From positions 186,001-250,000 of the IMG/VR virus record IMGVR_UViG_3300020154_000003: DNA of 64,000 nt; one strand, 5' to 3'. The translations under genes and the position numbers were made by a program. Positions 560 to 64,000 of this stretch are shown here, one piece after another; the stretch's first letter is position 1, and the number at the start of each line of letters is the position of its first letter. The notes beneath the pieces were generated by a model. The model ran no database searches and had not been told where the DNA came from. It worked only from the letters and a program-made list of their open reading frames with translations.

Positions 560-1218
560 TCAACAACTACAGATTGACAATAGCACAATTATAAAAAACA
601 TGAGTAGACCTGACAGGCCAGCAAGACCGAGTATCCAAGGATTGGTTTCCTTTTCCAGTTTTTTGCCTTCCATGTTTATCTATCTTGAAGGGATGCAGTC
701 ACAATAAATTTAGAGGCAATCATCTTGCAGCGTTTCAGCTTAACAAAATTGAATGTGGTTATTGTTGTGGTTTCTCCATCGCGATCACTCACTATCCAAG
801 AATCCTTAGTTTTAGTTCTTGTCTTCCAATTATTCTGATGGAGTTTTGTATATCCGTTACCTCTACGATGTTCCTTTTCCTTTTTATCAACATACTTCCT
901 AGCAGCCTTTCCATTTTCAAATAGAAGGTCACCCATTACGTATGAAGCAGAATGCTCGTAATCAGTTTTATAGTTTGAGTGTTGGATGTGTTTGAGAATA
1001 ACAACCATTACTTAAAATTTAGGATCAAATCTTTCGTCAACATAGGTTCGTCTTGCCCTTGCAGCCATGTTACAGCGATCCTGTATCATTTGGTGCAGCT
1101 TCCAAGCATCTTCTTCTGCAAGGTAGATCACTAATGCTGTTTGACCATCCTCTTGGGTAAAGGTCATCTTGATCTTTCCTTGGTTGTAATCGACTGCTTC
1201 TGGATTTAACATGAGCGT

Positions 1219-4144: not shown

Positions 4145-4206
4145 TGGTGAAGGGAGAGGGAATCGAACCCCCGATCAAAAACTCTAACCAACTGAGTTAT
4201 CCCTTC
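4145..4206 (-). ncRNA. 62-nt tRNA-like RNA lacking the entire anticodon arm
   Basis: GAAGGGA/TCCCTTC acceptor stem + ACCA, D arm ACTC-AGTTGGTTA-GAGT, 8-nt linker TTTTGATC, T arm GGGGG-TTCGATT-CCCTC. Confidence 0.8.
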
Positions 4207-4644: not shown

Positions 4645-5330
4645 ATTTTTCAACATGTTCATTCAAAATCTTCAGCAGTTCATCCAGATGTGCTTCTGTC
4701 TCGCGTGTGCCAAACGATGATCTTCTTTTGTGGATGTTGTCAAGGATTTCCATTACTCCCATCCCTCCACGTTCGTTCAGTCTTTTAAGGGTTTGCCCGT
4801 GGTTTTTTTGTGCCCATTCCTCATTCAATAGAGACATCGGGACAGATTTCGGACAGTTCTTATGAAACCTTCGAGACTCAGAATGAATTTCCATTGTGTC
4901 CATATCCTTAATTAAGTTTTACCTCTTCGCATGGTCAGAGAAAACAACTCATCGGTTGCTTTCGTTTGATTGTAAAAGCCACCGTATTTTGTTAAGGTAG
5001 AATAGATGTCGTTCCAAATCCTTTGATCCTTCAAAGTCTTTTTCTTACGTGGATCGTATATAAGTTTTGCCATGAGTTTAATCGCATTCACCTTGACAAA
5101 CTGATTTCAAATACCCACAGCTTGAGCATCGATTTTCTGATTCCCACGCATCCTGCTTGGCTTGTTCACGGTCATTCAATACCCATTCCTCTTTATCTTC
5201 GTCCCATACCATTCCTTCGTAAAAGCCTCCGGGGCCATTACTGGTAAAGAATTCTCTGTTAGTCATCTCACCTCTGGAACGATGATGGTCATCCCATTTG
5301 GTGTCATTTTCATTGTAACCCGGATATTTT

Positions 5331-23302: not shown

Positions 23303-23317
23303 ATGCGCTGTTATTAA

Positions 23318-23346
23318 AACAATTTTGAAAAGTATACGTATATTTG
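23318..23346 (+). promoter_or_regulatory. Phage promoter AAC-N16-CGTATA overlapping a TATATTTG -7 element
   Basis: Directly upstream of the ~440-nt structured RNA. Confidence 0.75.
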
Positions 23347-23349
23347 TGC

Positions 23350-23797
23350 ATAGGCTGCTAAAACAGCATAGATAGAATCCCGGAGGGATTGCTGGACGGT
23401 TGATCGGTTAGTTTAGATAGGATTTTAAAACATGCCTCCCGAATGAGGCAGAAGCGGGTGACAACCCCGCACGATCAGAGTAAAACATATGTTCTAATAG
23501 AAGGATGCCTGACTTTCATCAGGAGGTATCGGGTGAACCAATTCCCGGTTATGTTGAAATAAAGACCGATAGTACGAATCCGGGTGCAAAGTCCTGATAA
23601 ACGGCATAGCGAGTGTTGTAAACAGGCAGGCGGGAATCTCGCTTACATACCCGTTGGGATGGCTCCCGTTGACAAGCTGCAGGCATGTTAGTGAGTCAAT
23701 GACACAAAATGGGTTAGAGGTGACAGTTGATGGAACCTTAAAGTTGGTGGGAGTCCAACATTAAAGCCATCGGGGAGTAATCTTCGGTGGCTTTTTT
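23350..23797 (+). ncRNA. Candidate ~440-nt highly structured ncRNA
   Basis: No ORF of 60 aa or more, raised GC, many hairpins (AATCCC/GGGATT, TGCCTC/GAGGCA, GCGGG/CCCGC, CCTGA/TCAGG, GTTGG/CCAAC), own promoter and terminator. Confidence 0.7.
23763..23797 (+). terminator. Rho-independent terminator
   Basis: AAAGCCATCGGGGA-GTAA-TCTTCGGTGGCTTT + T run. Confidence 0.8.
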
Positions 23798-23832
23798 AAA
23801 TACAAATTTCCACACTTAACCTATTTATAGTC

Positions 23833-60667: not shown

Positions 60668-62008
60668 AGAACGTGAGCATTTAACATTTTCATGACTTCA
60701 TCATAAGGCATGTTGAGTATGCTGTTAAAGTACGCCTGATCACTCAAATCCACATCCAACTCCAGAAAATTCATCACGTCATTCAAATGTTCATTTCTAT
60801 CCCACTTCTTAAAATCGATTTTAAGCAATTGAGCCTCGTATGCTGCTCTTTTCGCAATAAACATCTCTTTTATTTCTTCATTCATCTCTACACTTCAAAT
60901 CCCTTTATGAAAATCACCACTCCCACAAATATAAGTGAAAAATAGAACCTATGCTTGAACATAGGTTTGTTACGGTGAAGATAGATTTTTGGCCTAAATT
61001 TGAATTTAGGTGCCAGATAAATTCGAATCGACATCTCTTAGAGTTTACCGATACAGTCCGGGCAATTCAAGTAACCGTCCAGTACATCGACTGGATTCTG
61101 GTTGCAACATGCACACATAATCAAGATCGGTTGTTGAACTTTTGCCTTTGGAGAAACCTTGTTATCCTTGGGCTTCATGGTTTGAGTCTTCATTTTAATA
61201 TTGCTTTAGCACTATCAAGTTTTTCAATGGCTAGTTTTTCGAGTTCTTCCCTTGACATACTCTTAATTTTTTCAAGATTCGGGTCAAGTTCCATATTCAA
61301 ATCAGCAGTAGCTTTAAGAATTTCAGCACGAAGGAATTTTGTAATGTCAGCAGGGAGTGCCTTTGCATTTGCATCGGTAGTGACAAACTCTCCAACAGCA
61401 CCGCCTGCGATGATCAAAAGCATATCTTTTTTTGCGGGAGTTGCAATGTAAGCAAGCCAGAAAAATATAAACATAGGAGTGGAGTACCACAGCCATTTAC
61501 GCATAATTCTGAGATTTTCTTTATCTTCGTCAGTTTCATCTTTAGAAGTAATAGTACCATCGTAGGTCGTTTTCGTGTTTGCAGAAAATTTATAGCAAAC
61601 AAAAATAAGGAACGATACAGCAAAAATGATAGTTGTAAGAACGCACATCCATCCGAAGAAGGTGCTCAGGTTATCGACAATTGAAAACAAGTAGAAAATT
61701 AGATACCAATTCATAATGATTTTTATTTAGATTTTTTTCTTTTTTTAGGTTGATTATAAGGTTGCTTCAAAAACGACACTAATTCGGCATGATTCAGTTT
61801 TCCTGAACTGATGTCGAAATAGATTTTTCGCAATGTGTCAACTCTTGGGTTATTGATGTTCACTACATCATCAAGCACTTTATCCAGAACTTTCATCGCA
61901 TCCACCTTAACGGAGCGAGAAACCTTCCTAGACACAGGTTTTTGTGCGATAATTTCCTCGTGTTTCTGTGGTTTTGCGGGTATGTTGAATAAGTTAAACA
62001 TATTCAAA

Positions 62009-62033
62009 TATACGCAAACCAGAGGAAAATGTT
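62009..62033 (-). promoter_or_regulatory. Phage promoter AAC-N16-CGTATA
   Basis: Exact spacing; upstream of ORF 61723. Confidence 0.75.
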
Positions 62034-62289
62034 ACAAAAAAGGCTACTTTTTTATCATCCTGAATTAAGGATGGAGGTAGTAAACAAGGGTGTTAAAGAC
62101 AAGAAATGCAGCACCGAATGCTACTAGTATTGAAACCACTATTGAAATTTTTAACGCCCTTGCCCTTGCTTTATTTTTTGCGATCTCCTTCCTCACGTTT
62201 CTTTTCAATAAATTGGTATAATAAGATGAACAGGATAAGAGTGACATAAAAGCTAATGAATAGGTTTATAAACATTCTTATAAATAGTA

Positions 62290-63597
62290 AAAGTTTTAGG
62301 CAAGTGCATCGACCATTTGGGTTCGCAGCAATGGTCTTGCCTAAAACATAACTGAGAGTTTCTCAGTTTTTCTTTAAATAGTAACCCACGCCTTAATAGT
62401 ATAGGTTCGGTTCTTACTCTGTTCGAGCACTGAGTTTTTCAGAACCTACGACTGTTTGTACATCTGCCAGTACGACCCACAGACAAATTACTGGCATCAT
62501 GGTATTCCAATGGCTCTCACGTTCGCCAATCCTCTCTTCCCTCTCTTTTGCTTGGCCATCATGACGATGGTTTTCATTCTGACAAGGATCAAGGTCGCTA
62601 CAATACTTACGGGTTTGTAGGGCATATTGCAAGCCCCTTGCAACACGACCGAGTTTTTTTAGAGATAGATAGAAATGCTTACTTATGTGTTCAAGTTCGG
62701 CATCCCCGTGTGGCAGCTTTGCAATCCGTACTTCACGATGAATGAGACCGTGGAGCAAAGTTTTCTCTTTAAGTCGCTAACCATGCGACAGCCAGTCTTA
62801 TTTTCAATGTCACGATCTAAAGGATGTTTAACAGTCGATCTTAATGGGTATTTCAAGGTTCCTGACTTCATCCACTACTACGAACCCTTTTTCGTAACCA
62901 TGACATTCAAAAAAACAGCAACTACACAGAAGGTTTTTTAATGTTGTTTCACTCAATCAGCAGCTATACAACTGTGTAGTCCCTTACGTTATCCCCCTTA
63001 TCATCAGTGTGGCCACACGGATTTACGGTTGGTTCCCATATCAGTTTACCGTTCAAAAATCATTATGTTGTGATCAGCCATCGAGTACTTTTATCCACCA
63101 ACGCCACTCTATGTATTGGCGCACAACTTTGGCTGGCTATGGTCACCATCTTAAAATCACAACATTAAATAACATGTGGTCAGGGATTATGGCATCTCGC
63201 TTGCAGTGCCAAACTTGCGGATAATCCTCCCCTCCACAATGAGATAATAAATTGACGAATGATCGAGATTTATATAGCCGCGAAGTAGAACAACGCTCTC
63301 TTTCTGTGCTGCGCATTTATCGCCAATTTAAAATAAAAAATTAAGTCTCATCACTACAGTTGTAATGAGATTGTCGTAACTTCCTCTTACTTTCTTCAGA
63401 GCGAGATTTAATATGATCAGAGCGTACTCGCGAAGGAGCGACACATTTAAGCGTTCTAAGACCAGTACCGAAGTACCGACCCAATGAGTAATCACATTAC
63501 GAAACCAACTTTACCAACTTACTGTACGCATACACAGGTGTCATTACTCTGTTTACCAATGTGTGTCGGTGAGCCTCTGCAGCGAGACCCTTGGCTT
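62290..63597 (-). ncRNA. Candidate giant (~1.3 kb) structured ncRNA in a GOLLD/ROOL-like context
   Basis: No credible ORF, raised GC, more than ten 7-12 bp nested helices; downstream of a promoter, tRNA-like element and boxA; ends in a 12-bp stem + TTTT. Confidence 0.7.
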
Positions 63598-63608
63598 AAT
63601 TTCTATTT

Positions 63609-63620
63609 TTTCAAAGAACA
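63609..63620 (-). promoter_or_regulatory. rrn-type boxA antitermination element
   Basis: TGTTCTTTGAAA on the minus strand, matching the GTTCTTTGAAA boxA of rRNA leaders. Confidence 0.55.
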
Positions 63621-63729
63621 ATGAGGTGCAGGAAGGTCGGTTATGCCTCCTTTTTCCAATACGTACATTTAAACGTTCATCCTGCAAACCTTGCAGTAAC
63701 CACACCTCCAACCCTATAGGAGTTGTTTG

Positions 63730-63819
63730 TAGGGGTGAGAGGATTCGAACCTCCACTCTTCGGGGCTTCAGTAATGCAACCACAGCCCCGATGTTTTATC
63801 CAGTTAAACTACCTCCCCT
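63730..63819 (-). ncRNA. 90-nt tRNA-like RNA with an extended anticodon arm
   Basis: AGGGGAGG/CACCCCT-A acceptor (imperfect), D arm GTTT-AACTGGATA-AAAC, 8-bp stem TCGGGGCT/AGCCCCGA capped by 16 nt, T arm GGAGG-TTCGAAT-CCTCT. Confidence 0.75.
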
Positions 63820-63834
63820 GTAATCATATGCAAT

Positions 63835-63859
63835 TATACGGAGAATAATGTGAATTGTT
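63835..63859 (-). promoter_or_regulatory. Phage promoter AAC-N16-CGTATA driving the tRNA-like + giant RNA unit
   Basis: Exact spacing; 15 nt upstream of the tRNA-like 5' end. Confidence 0.75.
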
Positions 63860-64000
63860 CACACTATTCAATCTTTTTTCGACAAAATTCTTTATTCGCT
63901 TTTTTCTTTTTGTCAGGGACAACCATAGGTTTGGGCATGATATTAGTTTCACGACTAATTTTTTTAGCCATCTTAAGTCTGTCCAAATTCGTTATGGTTT

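What the first reader, a model, noticed from the sequence alone, without database searches (positions are those of the whole stretch)
62290..63859. rRNA-operon-like unit: promoter, tRNA-like leader, boxA, then a ~1.3-kb ornate non-coding RNA
Seen: in a genome with almost no intergenic space, about 1.4 kb has no credible ORF and is packed with nested helices. These include 62293-62304/62336-62347 (12 bp), 62402-62408/62442-62448, 62465-62472/62489-62496, 62627-62633/62637-62643, 62806-62812/62901-62907, 62921-62929/62972-62980, 63065-63074/63156-63165 and 63184-63190/63221-63227. C-A mismatches on the plus strand become G-U pairs on the minus strand, agreeing with the promoter direction. A boxA (TGTTCTTTGAAA) precedes it, as expected for a long untranslated RNA that needs Nus antitermination. 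Established: GOLLD (~800 nt) and ROOL (~600 nt) are giant phage-associated RNAs often found next to tRNAs. Inference: an unusually large member of such a class or a new giant RNA; it could also be several RNAs in tandem.
Basis: partly seen in the sequence, partly recalled or inferred. Interest (0 to 1): 0.9.

Follow-up and report, generated by a model that had tools for sequence, protein, structure and literature searches.

The report
Phage stable-RNA island replacing tRNA cluster
A 1.5-kb stretch of a 366-kb jumbo phage is non-coding and conserved; it lies where related phages keep their tRNA genes and looks like a string of separate folded RNA modules, at least one of them an undescribed RNA family, rather than one proven giant RNA.

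Summary
Window 62290-63859 has no conserved ORF, and substitutions show no codon periodicity (p~0.75, against p<0.001 in the flanking small ORFs). All eight listed helices are perfect. A 10/12 sigma-70-like promoter, a non-canonical tRNA-like element and TGTTCTTTGAAA lie on the minus strand. No Rfam 15 family other than tRNA matches, so GOLLD, ROOL, OLE, introns and rRNA are not found.

Three close relatives from Logan assemblies keep the tract. Across 24 local helices, 21 changes keep the pair (7 compensatory) and 2 break it; slid controls give 19-25 breaks.

The slot is a tRNA cluster in more distant jumbo phages. Module D (window 62906-63067) is a three-way junction found in 7 lineages: 95% of cells paired, 14 of 18 pairs with compensatory changes.

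The parts are separable:
- D stands alone among tRNAs elsewhere.
- Module E lies 7.4 kb from D in another phage.
- The tRNA-like element is deleted in one relative.
- Every well-supported helix spans 270 nt or less.

Best reading: a stable-RNA operon derived from a tRNA cluster, like T4's tRNA-rnaC-rnaD unit, built from new modules. A single giant RNA is not excluded (~0.2). Function is unknown and there is no expression data.

The parts
63864..63971 (-). Upstream 35-aa ORF (MAKKISRETN...). This is context: it marks the 5' border of the RNA slot.
   Evidence: Substitutions fall on codon position 3. DNA homologs sit directly upstream of the tRNA clusters of L206 and L216.
63833..63861 (-). Sigma-70-like promoter, TGAACA-17 nt-TATAAT.
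   Evidence: 10 of 12 consensus matches. Kept in L197; the -10 is TATATT in L198. This is a consensus match only and has not been shown to fire.
63730..63818 (-). Non-canonical 89-nt tRNA-like element. The anticodon arm is expanded (8-bp stem plus a 16-nt apical part), the acceptor stem has mismatches, and no CCA is encoded.
   Evidence: Rfam tRNA 44.3 bits against a cut-off of 29; ARAGORN finds none. Homologs with still longer anticodon arms lie inside the tRNA clusters of L206 (11135-11232) and L216 (9625-9736). Deleted in L198.
63621..63729 (-). Hairpin-rich spacer between the tRNA-like element and the leader motif. It is lost together with the tRNA-like element in L198.
   Evidence: Alignment A1 shows a deletion in L198 that matches about window 63622-63824.
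63609..63620 (-). boxA-like leader TGTTCTTTGAAA, followed by an A-rich run.
   Evidence: GTTCTTTGAAA is kept directly after the promoter in L198 despite the deletion. A similar leader, GTTCTTAAAAATATTGAAAAAA, follows a promoter-like site at the start of the 1.43-kb non-coding tract of L229. The motif alone occurs at chance frequency in the window. Its likeness to rrn boxA rests on my own knowledge.
63327..63611 (-). Domain A (~285 nt). Closing helix 63336-63345/63595-63604; a hypervariable apical stem-loop; a terminator-like hairpin at 63346-63370 followed by a U-run.
   Evidence: two one-sided changes in the closing helix keep pairing, as do the changes in hairpin H1 (two), the helix beside the variable stem-loop (two) and the terminator-like hairpin (one); the 4-bp helix has one compensatory change. 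One search shows one further change, T.T to T-A, just outside the scored closing helix. Terminator-like site. Alignment-fold z = -4.1 on the minus strand against -0.2 on the plus strand.
63249..63329 (-). Domain B1, closed by a 10-bp helix.
   Evidence: C-G to U-A compensatory change plus G.U to G-C in L197 and L198.
63175..63238 (-).
   Evidence: Nearly invariant in the close relatives. The 24-nt 5' part and the 3' part recur in L231 upstream of tRNA-Tyr. There the closing helix changes from TGTGG/CCACA to TGAGG/CCTCA.
63065..63165 (-). Domain C, closed by a 10-bp helix, with a hypervariable tip.
   Evidence: An A-to-G change gives U.G on the minus strand only. In L231 three tRNA or tRNA-like genes fill the space between B2 and D.
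62906..63067 (-). Module D, a three-way-junction RNA. Layout: P1 - AACUGAUAUGGGAAC - variable hairpin P2 - GGAUAACGUAAGGG - P3 (62920-62929/62972-62981) - P1' - U7.
   Evidence: Covariance model R1 scores 148 bits here. Nine sequences from 7 lineages: 95% of cells paired, 14 of 18 pairs with compensatory changes against 2-7 in slid controls, and 0 of 500 shuffles reach the covariation score. L229 and L231 were not in the training set. No Rfam match even at E<=10.
62800..62909 (-). Its 83-nt core is conserved in sequence.
   Evidence: Three substitutions among the close relatives. A homolog lies at L229 4422-4340(-), nhmmer E=1e-13, 7.4 kb from that phage's D and between small ORFs. The fold is not resolved: 2 compensatory pairs and several breaks.
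62370..62799 (-).
   Evidence: Compensatory changes in F.hp2 (CACG/CGTG to CATG/CATG), G.hp1 (U-A to C-G) and H.hp2 (U-A to A-U through an A.A intermediate). The two outer pairs of 62402-62408/62442-62448 break in L197. No homolog was found outside the close relatives.
62280..62368 (-). 3' end. Hairpin 62350-62368, then the compound hairpin 62293-62347 (12-bp outer and 7-bp inner stem), then a U-rich tail.
   Evidence: One G-C to A-U compensatory change in each stem. Alignment-fold z = -3.5. The next gene, a 60-aa membrane-type ORF at 62065-62247(-), shows codon-periodic substitutions.

Best explanation
The tract is a stable-RNA operon in the slot that related jumbo phages use for their tRNA gene cluster.

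Proposed mechanism:
1. Transcription starts at the sigma-70-like promoter (63833-63861) and runs on the minus strand.
2. It reads through a degenerate tRNA-like gene and a boxA-like leader.
3. It continues through about ten independently folded modules of 65-285 nt, each closed by its own helix. Two of them end in terminator-like hairpins.
4. It stops at the compound hairpin 62293-62347.
5. The primary transcript is then probably cut into several stable small RNAs by the host enzymes that process tRNA precursors, as in the phage T4 tRNA-rnaD-rnaC unit.
6. The boxA-like leader may let the polymerase read through the internal terminator-like hairpins.

Module D is an old jumbo-phage RNA with a conserved three-way junction. 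It most likely acts in trans by binding a conserved protein or RNA partner linked to tRNA metabolism or tRNA-directed defence. The other modules are gains specific to this lineage or fast-evolving.

Shown: the tract is non-coding and under purifying selection; there are local helices with compensatory changes; the strand is the window's minus strand; the slot is homologous to tRNA clusters; D, E, B2 and the tRNA-like element are modular.

Inferred: transcription, antitermination, processing and any function.
For: Non-coding and conserved:
- No codon periodicity, frame-breaking indels, ORFs not kept in relatives.
- 88-90% identity to L197 including the hypervariable tips, against 55-61% at third codon positions of rIIA, rIIB and the 174-aa gene.

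Structure and strand:
- 24 local helices: 14 one-sided and 7 compensatory changes keep the pair, 2 break it. Slid controls give 0 compensatory and 19-25 breaks. Read as antisense, 8 break.
- MFE is -362 kcal/mol on the minus strand against -321 on the plus strand.
- Transitions that give G.U on the minus strand number 15, against 5 on the plus strand.
- Alignment-fold z-scores are more negative on the minus strand and positive in the flanking genes.

The slot is a tRNA cluster elsewhere:
- The upstream 35-aa ORF is followed by tRNAs, the tRNA-like homolog and D in L206 and L216.
- L231 has B2, tRNA-Tyr, two tRNA-likes, D, and then the same downstream genes as the window.

Modularity:
- D is autonomous among tRNAs in 5 other lineages.
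- E is 7.4 kb from D in L229.
- The tRNA-like element is deleted in L198.
- Hypervariable replacements sit at hairpin tips.
- There are terminator-like hairpins after domain A and after D.

Precedent: T4 carries two stable RNAs of unknown function at the end of its tRNA cluster.
Against: - There is no expression data of any kind. The promoter, leader and terminators are consensus-level calls.
- One promoter, one strong terminal terminator and strict collinearity in three relatives also fit a single long RNA.
- Two inter-domain helices carry a compensatory change: L001 8308-8315/8514-8521 (span 213 nt) and 8826-8832/9125-9131 (span 305 nt).
- For most modules only three closely related sequences exist. 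I chose the 24 helices by eye, so the 21:2 count is biased upward.
- No processing sites can be shown.
- L229 also has a >1.4-kb non-coding tract with a similar leader and terminator. This may mean the long form itself is the selected unit.
Confidence: 0.6

Rival explanations
1. One giant multi-domain RNA of ~1.3-1.5 kb works as a single particle. It would be a new class larger than GOLLD or ROOL, kept intact by boxA-type antitermination, with D as one of its cores.
For: - A single promoter and a single strong terminal hairpin.
- Collinear conservation over the whole length in L197 and L198.
- A conserved leader right after the promoter in L198 and in L229, whose D also lies inside a 1.43-kb ORF-free tract with a terminator.
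- Two candidate inter-domain helices with compensatory changes.
- A long-range closing helix for the 285-nt domain A.
Against: - D, E and B2 occur apart from each other in other phages.
- In L231, L206 and L216, D is a free-standing last element after tRNAs.
- Every well-supported helix spans 270 nt or less.
- There are internal terminator-like hairpins.
- Outside D, the bodies of the window tract and the L229 tract share no detectable sequence.
- When G.U pairs are allowed, long-range helices appear at chance-like numbers.
Confidence: 0.2
2. The tract is a long cis-acting leader or attenuator that controls the downstream genes (the 60-aa membrane ORF, the 94-aa and 174-aa genes), with the modules acting as riboregulators.
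For: - It has the same orientation as the downstream genes.
- D carries a P1 stem followed by a U-run in all lineages, like an expression platform, and it directly precedes an ORF in L206, L216 and L231.
Against: - In L209, D is followed by ~480 nt of non-coding DNA and a tRNA. In the window it is followed by more RNA modules.
- A compound terminator separates the tract from the next ORF.
- 1.3 kb is far beyond known leaders.
Confidence: 0.07
3. The tract is a DNA-level element (replication origin, packaging or recombination site), or decayed tRNA or gene remnants without RNA function.
For: - It is an AT-rich genome, with many inverted repeats everywhere.
- The neighbourhood is a recombination mosaic: the 73- and 76-aa genes are 99% identical to L197, while rIIA is 79% identical.
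Against: - Compensatory changes and the strand-specific excess of G.U over A.C argue for selection on a transcript.
- Blocks are far more conserved than synonymous sites.
- There are no direct repeats or iterons.
- No tRNA remnants appear beyond the one hit at E<=10.
Confidence: 0.06

Closest known systems
Phage T4 tRNA cluster with the stable RNAs rnaC (species 1) and rnaD (species 2)
   Same: - Small stable structured RNAs of unknown function lie in the same transcription-unit-like block as phage tRNA genes, at the end of the cluster (T4 annotation).
- The phage has a T4-like gene set nearby: rIIA, rIIB, an Rnl1-type RNA ligase and a Dda helicase.
- In L206, L216 and L231, D is likewise the last element after the tRNAs.
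   Different: - There is no sequence or structure homology: model R1 does not hit T4 rnaC or rnaD.
- In the window the canonical tRNAs are gone (ARAGORN finds 0 in 64 kb).
- About 1.3 kb of novel modules fills the slot, against 260 nt in T4.
GOLLD and ROOL (giant ornate RNAs of phages and prophages, often next to tRNAs)
   Same: Large, structured, non-coding, phage-borne, linked to tRNA genes, and of unknown function.
   Different: - No match to the Rfam models even at E<=10.
- No evidence for a global fold with long-range closing helices.
- The parts occur separately in other genomes.
Bacterial rRNA operon leader with boxA and Nus-factor antitermination
   Same: A strong promoter, a tRNA-type gene, a boxA-like motif close to the consensus of Gram-positive rrn leaders (my own knowledge), and a long untranslated structured transcript with internal terminator-like hairpins.
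   Different: - No rRNA is present: no SSU or LSU hits, and similarity to E. coli 16S and 23S is at chance level.
- boxA function is untested and the motif frequency is at chance.
- The host is unknown.
tRNA-like structures that do not decode (for example mascRNA, or the tRNA-like domain of YrlA)
   Same: The first element keeps the acceptor, D and T arms and a GGTTCGAATCC T-loop, but lacks a normal 7-nt anticodon loop. A second element of the window (4148-4206) lacks the anticodon arm altogether.
   Different: No Rfam match to those families above chance, and no Ro/Rsr-type partner is seen nearby.

Membership tests
GOLLD (RF01998) / ROOL (RF03087) / OLE / HEARO / raiA and other large Rfam ncRNAs | A match to the family covariance model (sequence plus structure). 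| tested here: not met
   cmscan of the whole window at gathering scores, and of 61900-64000 at E<=10, returns only tRNA and chance-level small hits. The same holds for relatives L197, L206 and L216.
Group I / group II introns | A catalytic core matched by the Rfam intron models. | tested here: not met
   No Intron_gpI, Intron_gpII or group-II-D1D4 hits at E<=10.
rRNA operon | Presence of 16S, 23S or 5S rRNA or recognisable fragments of them. | tested here: not met
   No SSU, LSU or 5S hits. The best local match to E. coli 23S is a 13-mer (blastn E=0.32; shuffle p~0.015 before correction for 14 tests).
rRNA operon | A boxA antitermination element downstream of the promoter. | tested here: inconclusive
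   TGTTCTTTGAAA lies at 63609-63620(-). It is kept after the promoter in L198, and a similar leader is present in L229. The motif frequency in the window equals chance. The consensus comes from memory, and Nus dependence is not testable here.
tRNA (for the first element, 63730-63818) | The Rfam tRNA model scores above the gathering cut-off. | tested here: met
   44.3 bits against a cut-off of 29.
tRNA (for the first element, 63730-63818) | A canonical cloverleaf with a 5-bp anticodon stem, a 7-nt loop and a fully paired acceptor stem, accepted by a tRNA gene finder. | tested here: not met
   ARAGORN finds no tRNA in the window. In the CM alignment, 22 nt take the place of the 7-nt loop and two acceptor pairs are non-standard. 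No CCA is encoded.
T4 rnaC / rnaD stable RNAs | Homology to the T4 RNAs. | tested here: not met
   Model R1, run with filters off on the T4 locus, gives nothing at rnaC or rnaD. Only module D was tested in this way.
Module D family (defined here; jumbo-phage three-way-junction RNA) | P1, P2 and P3 helices around the junction strands GAUAWKGGAAC and GGAUAAMGUAAGRG, with a U-run after P1'. | tested here: met
   The window copy scores 148 bits. The family has 95% of cells paired and 14 of 18 pairs with compensatory changes over 7 lineages, two of which were found independently of the model's training set.
Single giant structured RNA (generic) | Conserved long-range helices that tie distant domains into one fold. 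| tested here: inconclusive
   Only two candidate helices (spans 213 and 305 nt) have one compensatory change each, among hundreds of chance-level G.U-tolerant helices. Three near-identical sequences are too few.

The most novel reading that the evidence does not exclude
The whole 1.3-1.5-kb transcript is one functional giant RNA, the largest phage non-coding RNA class so far. It would be transcribed under boxA-type antitermination and built by adding lineage-specific domains around an old three-way-junction core (D) shared by jumbo phages of 325-371 kb. A parallel giant form would exist in L229.
Probability: 0.2. Interest if true: 0.85.

Novelty: new variant of a known kind. Interest (0 to 1): 0.62.

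Why it matters
Phage tRNA clusters are usually read as codon-usage or anti-defence tRNA supplies. Here one lineage of uncultured jumbo phages has kept the slot, its promoter and its leader, but has filled it with conserved structured RNAs that are not tRNAs.

- Module D gives a well-supported RNA family absent from Rfam 15. My motif scan found no true copy in one genome for each of 185,579 bacterial and archaeal species.
- The family is shared by jumbo phages from several environments and is always tied to tRNA-type genes.
- It offers a testable handle on the old question of what stable RNAs such as T4 rnaC and rnaD do.
- It may bear on whether phages use tRNA-processing pathways to make decoy or scaffold RNAs.
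- If the long form proves to be one molecule, it would extend the size range of ornate bacterial and phage RNAs.

Tried and rejected
- **Rfam.** The whole window at gathering scores and the region at E<=10 gave nothing but tRNA.
- **GenBank phages.** blastn in distant mode with the 2-kb region gave no match.
- **Stop-codon recoding.** All three stop codons are scattered in every frame.
- **Hidden or decayed genes.** No Pfam or PHROG hits for the six longest ORF pieces, and no periodicity.
- **Synteny through the RNA ligase.** 160 loci from viral and metagenome contigs held no homolog of the tract.
- **T-arm pattern scan.** It returned ordinary tRNA-Pro genes.
- **Small-ORF DNA pattern.** It found only the window's own contig.
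- **Motif scan of 185,579 genomes.** Four chance hits, three in coding DNA and one just upstream of an ORF.
- **The L210/213/214/215/217 group.** A chance match in GC-rich coding DNA.
- **A longer P2 gap in the motif pattern.** No hits.
- **Weak model hit in L049/L050.** It lacks the junction motifs.
- **Homology to rRNA.** Prompted by ACCTTGAAATACC in E and by a 25-nt 23S match in L209. Not significant for any module of the window.
- **T4 rnaC/rnaD homology.** None.
- **Whole-length alifold and long-range helix search.** Not informative with three close sequences.
- **Host inference from the ligase.** Uninformative.
- **Literature.** Two searches found no description of such a locus. One search for the boxA sequence was useless.
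Full report
**Origin and coordinates.** The window is part of a 366,038-bp contig, IMGVR_UViG_3300020154_000003, which is the same as Ga0196965_1000004. It has no close relative among GenBank phages. Locus L001 holds the reverse complement of the window end plus 7.7 kb beyond it; window position = 71715 minus L001 position.

The neighbourhood is T4-like. It holds rIIA- and rIIB-type genes, an Rnl1-type RNA ligase 650 nt upstream of the tract, a second RNA ligase and a Dda helicase.

**Check of the observation.**
- All eight helices are perfect.
- Stops of all three kinds fill all six frames.
- The longest ORFs (114, 88 and 86 aa) match no Pfam or PHROG family.
- The promoter TGAACA-17-TATAAT (63861-63833, minus strand) matches 10 of 12 consensus positions.
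- Rfam finds only a tRNA hit at 63730-63818(-), 44.3 bits. Twenty-two nt stand in place of the 7-nt anticodon loop and two acceptor pairs are non-standard. ARAGORN rejects it.
- TGTTCTTTGAAA lies at 63609-63620(-).

Three points weaken the sequence-only argument:
- Perfect local helices of 7 bp or more number 16, against 7.9+-2.7 in shuffles but 12+-3 in other tiles of this AT-rich window.
- Single-sequence fold z-scores are mostly near zero.
- The 11-mer GTTCTTTGAAA occurs as often as chance predicts.

**Close relatives.** A search with the downstream 174-aa protein found an 89%-identical protein on Logan contigs. L197 to L200 have the same gene order and the same ~2-kb gene-free gap.

The alignment shows long invariant blocks. 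These are broken by short segments that are wholly replaced and differ in length, and they sit at hairpin tips. Further results:
- Substitutions show no codon periodicity (p~0.75), while the two flanking small ORFs do (p<0.001). Indels break every frame.
- Identity to L197 is 88-90% including the replaced tips. Third codon positions are 55-61% identical in rIIA, rIIB and the 174-aa gene, and 77-79% in the ligase and the 94-aa gene. The neighbourhood is a recombination mosaic, so this comparison is only indicative.
- In 24 local helices, 14 one-sided changes and 7 double changes keep the pair and 2 break it. With partners slid by 1-2 columns there are no double changes and 19-25 breaks. Read as the other strand, 8 break. 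I picked these helices by eye, which inflates the contrast.
- Independent support for the strand comes from three sources. Transitions giving G.U number 15 on the minus strand against 5 on the plus strand, in helices defined symmetrically for both strands. MFE is -362 against -321 kcal/mol. Alignment-fold z-scores average about -1.6 on the minus strand and about -0.6 on the plus strand, and are positive in the flanking genes.

The tract is therefore a conserved, structured, non-coding RNA locus read from the minus strand. No expression data exist.

**What the slot is in other phages.** L198 lacks the tRNA-like element and the next ~110 nt but keeps the promoter and GTTCTTTGAAA. The 35-aa ORF just upstream of the promoter has DNA-level homologs in L206 (a 164-kb Logan contig) and L216 (a 363-kb IMG/VR contig).

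In both, that ORF is followed by a tRNA cluster. The cluster holds:
- a tRNA(CUA);
- a homolog of the window's tRNA-like element with an even longer anticodon arm (98 and 112 nt);
- further tRNAs;
- at the end, a piece with weak similarity to the middle of the window tract.

**Module D.** That weak similarity gave the pattern GATAWKGGAAC-N(25-55)-GGATAAMGTAAG. Together with a relaxed second pattern, it found true copies only in jumbo-phage contigs:
- L209/L211;
- L212 (353 kb);
- L216 (363 kb);
- L229 (326 kb);
- L231 (372 kb).

The other hits are chance matches, mostly inside coding DNA, including all four from one genome for each of 185,579 species.

The element is a three-way junction. P1, P2 and P3 covary, while the joining strands are nearly invariant. 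A U-run follows P1' in every lineage. Over nine sequences from seven lineages:
- 95% of cells are paired;
- 14 of 18 pairs have compensatory changes, against 2-7 in slid controls;
- no shuffle out of 500 reaches the covariation score;
- L229 and L231 were found without the model and then scored 52 and 97 bits.

No Rfam family matches it, even at E<=10 on the full-size L216 copy.

**One RNA or several.** Five lines of evidence favour several RNAs:
- In L206, L216 and L231, D is a free-standing last element after tRNAs. In L209 it lies between tRNAs.
- L231 is a syntenic intermediate. It has a B2 homolog whose closing helix changes from TGTGG/CCACA to TGAGG/CCTCA, then tRNA-Tyr, two insertion-bearing tRNA-likes and D. 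The same membrane ORFs and 94-aa gene as in the window follow. So domain C stands where L231 has tRNAs, and E to I are additions after D.
- The 83-nt core of E recurs in L229 (nhmmer E=1e-13), 7.4 kb from that phage's D and between two small ORFs.
- Every helix with good comparative support spans 270 nt or less. Terminator-like hairpins with U-runs follow domain A and D.
- T4 gives a precedent: rnaD and rnaC directly follow its tRNAs.

Three lines of evidence favour one long RNA:
- There is a single promoter and a single strong terminal hairpin.
- The tract is strictly collinear in the close relatives.
- L229 also has a 1.43-kb ORF-free tract containing D. It starts with a promoter-like site and a leader (GTTCTTAAAAATATTGAAAAAA) much like that of L198 (GTTCTTTGAAAGATTGAAAAAA), and it ends in a strong terminator.

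Two inter-domain helices carry one compensatory change each, but they sit among chance-level numbers of such helices. I put the array reading at about 0.6 and the single giant RNA at about 0.2.

**Mechanism proposed.**
- Shown: a conserved non-coding structured locus on the minus strand, in the tRNA-cluster slot, built from separable modules.
- Inferred: transcription from the sigma-70-like promoter; read-through of internal hairpins helped by the boxA-like leader; cutting of the precursor by host tRNA-processing nucleases into stable RNAs; and trans action of D on a conserved partner.
- The constant link with tRNA-type genes, the odd tRNA-likes in these phages and the nearby RNA-repair ligases make tRNA metabolism or tRNA-directed host defence the most likely field of action. 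This is a guess.

**Comparison with known families.**
- The tract is not GOLLD, ROOL, OLE, an intron or rRNA.
- D is not homologous to T4 rnaC or rnaD.
- It resembles the T4 tRNA and stable-RNA unit in layout and an rrn leader in its 5' organisation.
- D, and probably E and B2, are RNA motifs that I could not find described (Rfam 15).

**Verdict.** 'rRNA-operon-like' holds only for the promoter-tRNA-boxA layout. The lasting result is a new, well-supported jumbo-phage RNA family inside a tRNA-cluster slot that has been turned into an island of novel structured RNAs.

Noticed in passing
window 4148-4206 (-): A 59-nt tRNA-like element with acceptor, D and T arms but no anticodon arm (3 nt in its place), plus an encoded CCA. 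Rfam tRNA scores 45.4 bits; ARAGORN rejects it. It lies between small ORFs.
   Followed up: partly
window ~23305-23800 (+): A candidate second non-coding RNA. It sits in an 893-nt gap without any ATG-started ORF of 50 aa or more. There is a promoter-like TTGAAA...TATATT and terminator hairpins at both ends; the ~450 nt between them looks richer in G+C than its surroundings (by eye, not measured). Fold z = -2.5. No Rfam hit.
   Followed up: partly
L209 (IMGVR_UViG_3300031240_000008), reverse strand, ~230 nt upstream of its module D: A 25-nt perfect match to E. coli 23S rRNA positions 1912-1936 (AACTATAACGGTCCTAAGGTAGCGA), inside a phage tRNA cluster. This is a known target region for homing endonucleases. 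Neighbouring sequence also has GCACGAAT and GGCGTAA, as 23S does.
   Followed up: partly
L206 10929-11003; L216 9976-10048 (-): Related jumbo phages carry a tRNA with a CUA anticodon (amber-suppressor type; ARAGORN calls it 'Pyl') as the first gene of the cluster. No such tRNA is in the window.
   Followed up: no
L206 11135-11232; L216 9625-9736 (-); L209 6140-6251 (-); L212 3214-3393; L231 ~845-1100 (-): Many tRNA-type genes of these phages carry insertions of 15-110 nt, mostly in the anticodon arm. The inserts are too short for group I introns. RNA ligase genes lie near the cluster in the window (Rnl1-type) and about 6 kb away in L206.
   Followed up: no
L212 ~4730-4770: A minihelix-like element with only an acceptor stem and T arm, ending in CCA (GTGGAATTGAAAAAGGTTCAACTCCTTACTTCACCAC). 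ARAGORN finds no tRNA anywhere in the locus.
   Followed up: no
L206 11290-11460 and L216 (aligned): Two further conserved non-coding elements are shared by L206 and L216 between their tRNAs: GGGAAAGGTAGCATAGTATKAATGCGCCATACCGT, and a hairpin AGGTATGGAGAGGYTYGTGTGRAACTCCRARCCTTCCCG. Neither occurs in the window.
   Followed up: no
L001 236-1066 (beyond the window end): A gene with a GmrSD N-terminal domain (type IV restriction-like) lies upstream of rIIA in the same phage.
   Followed up: no
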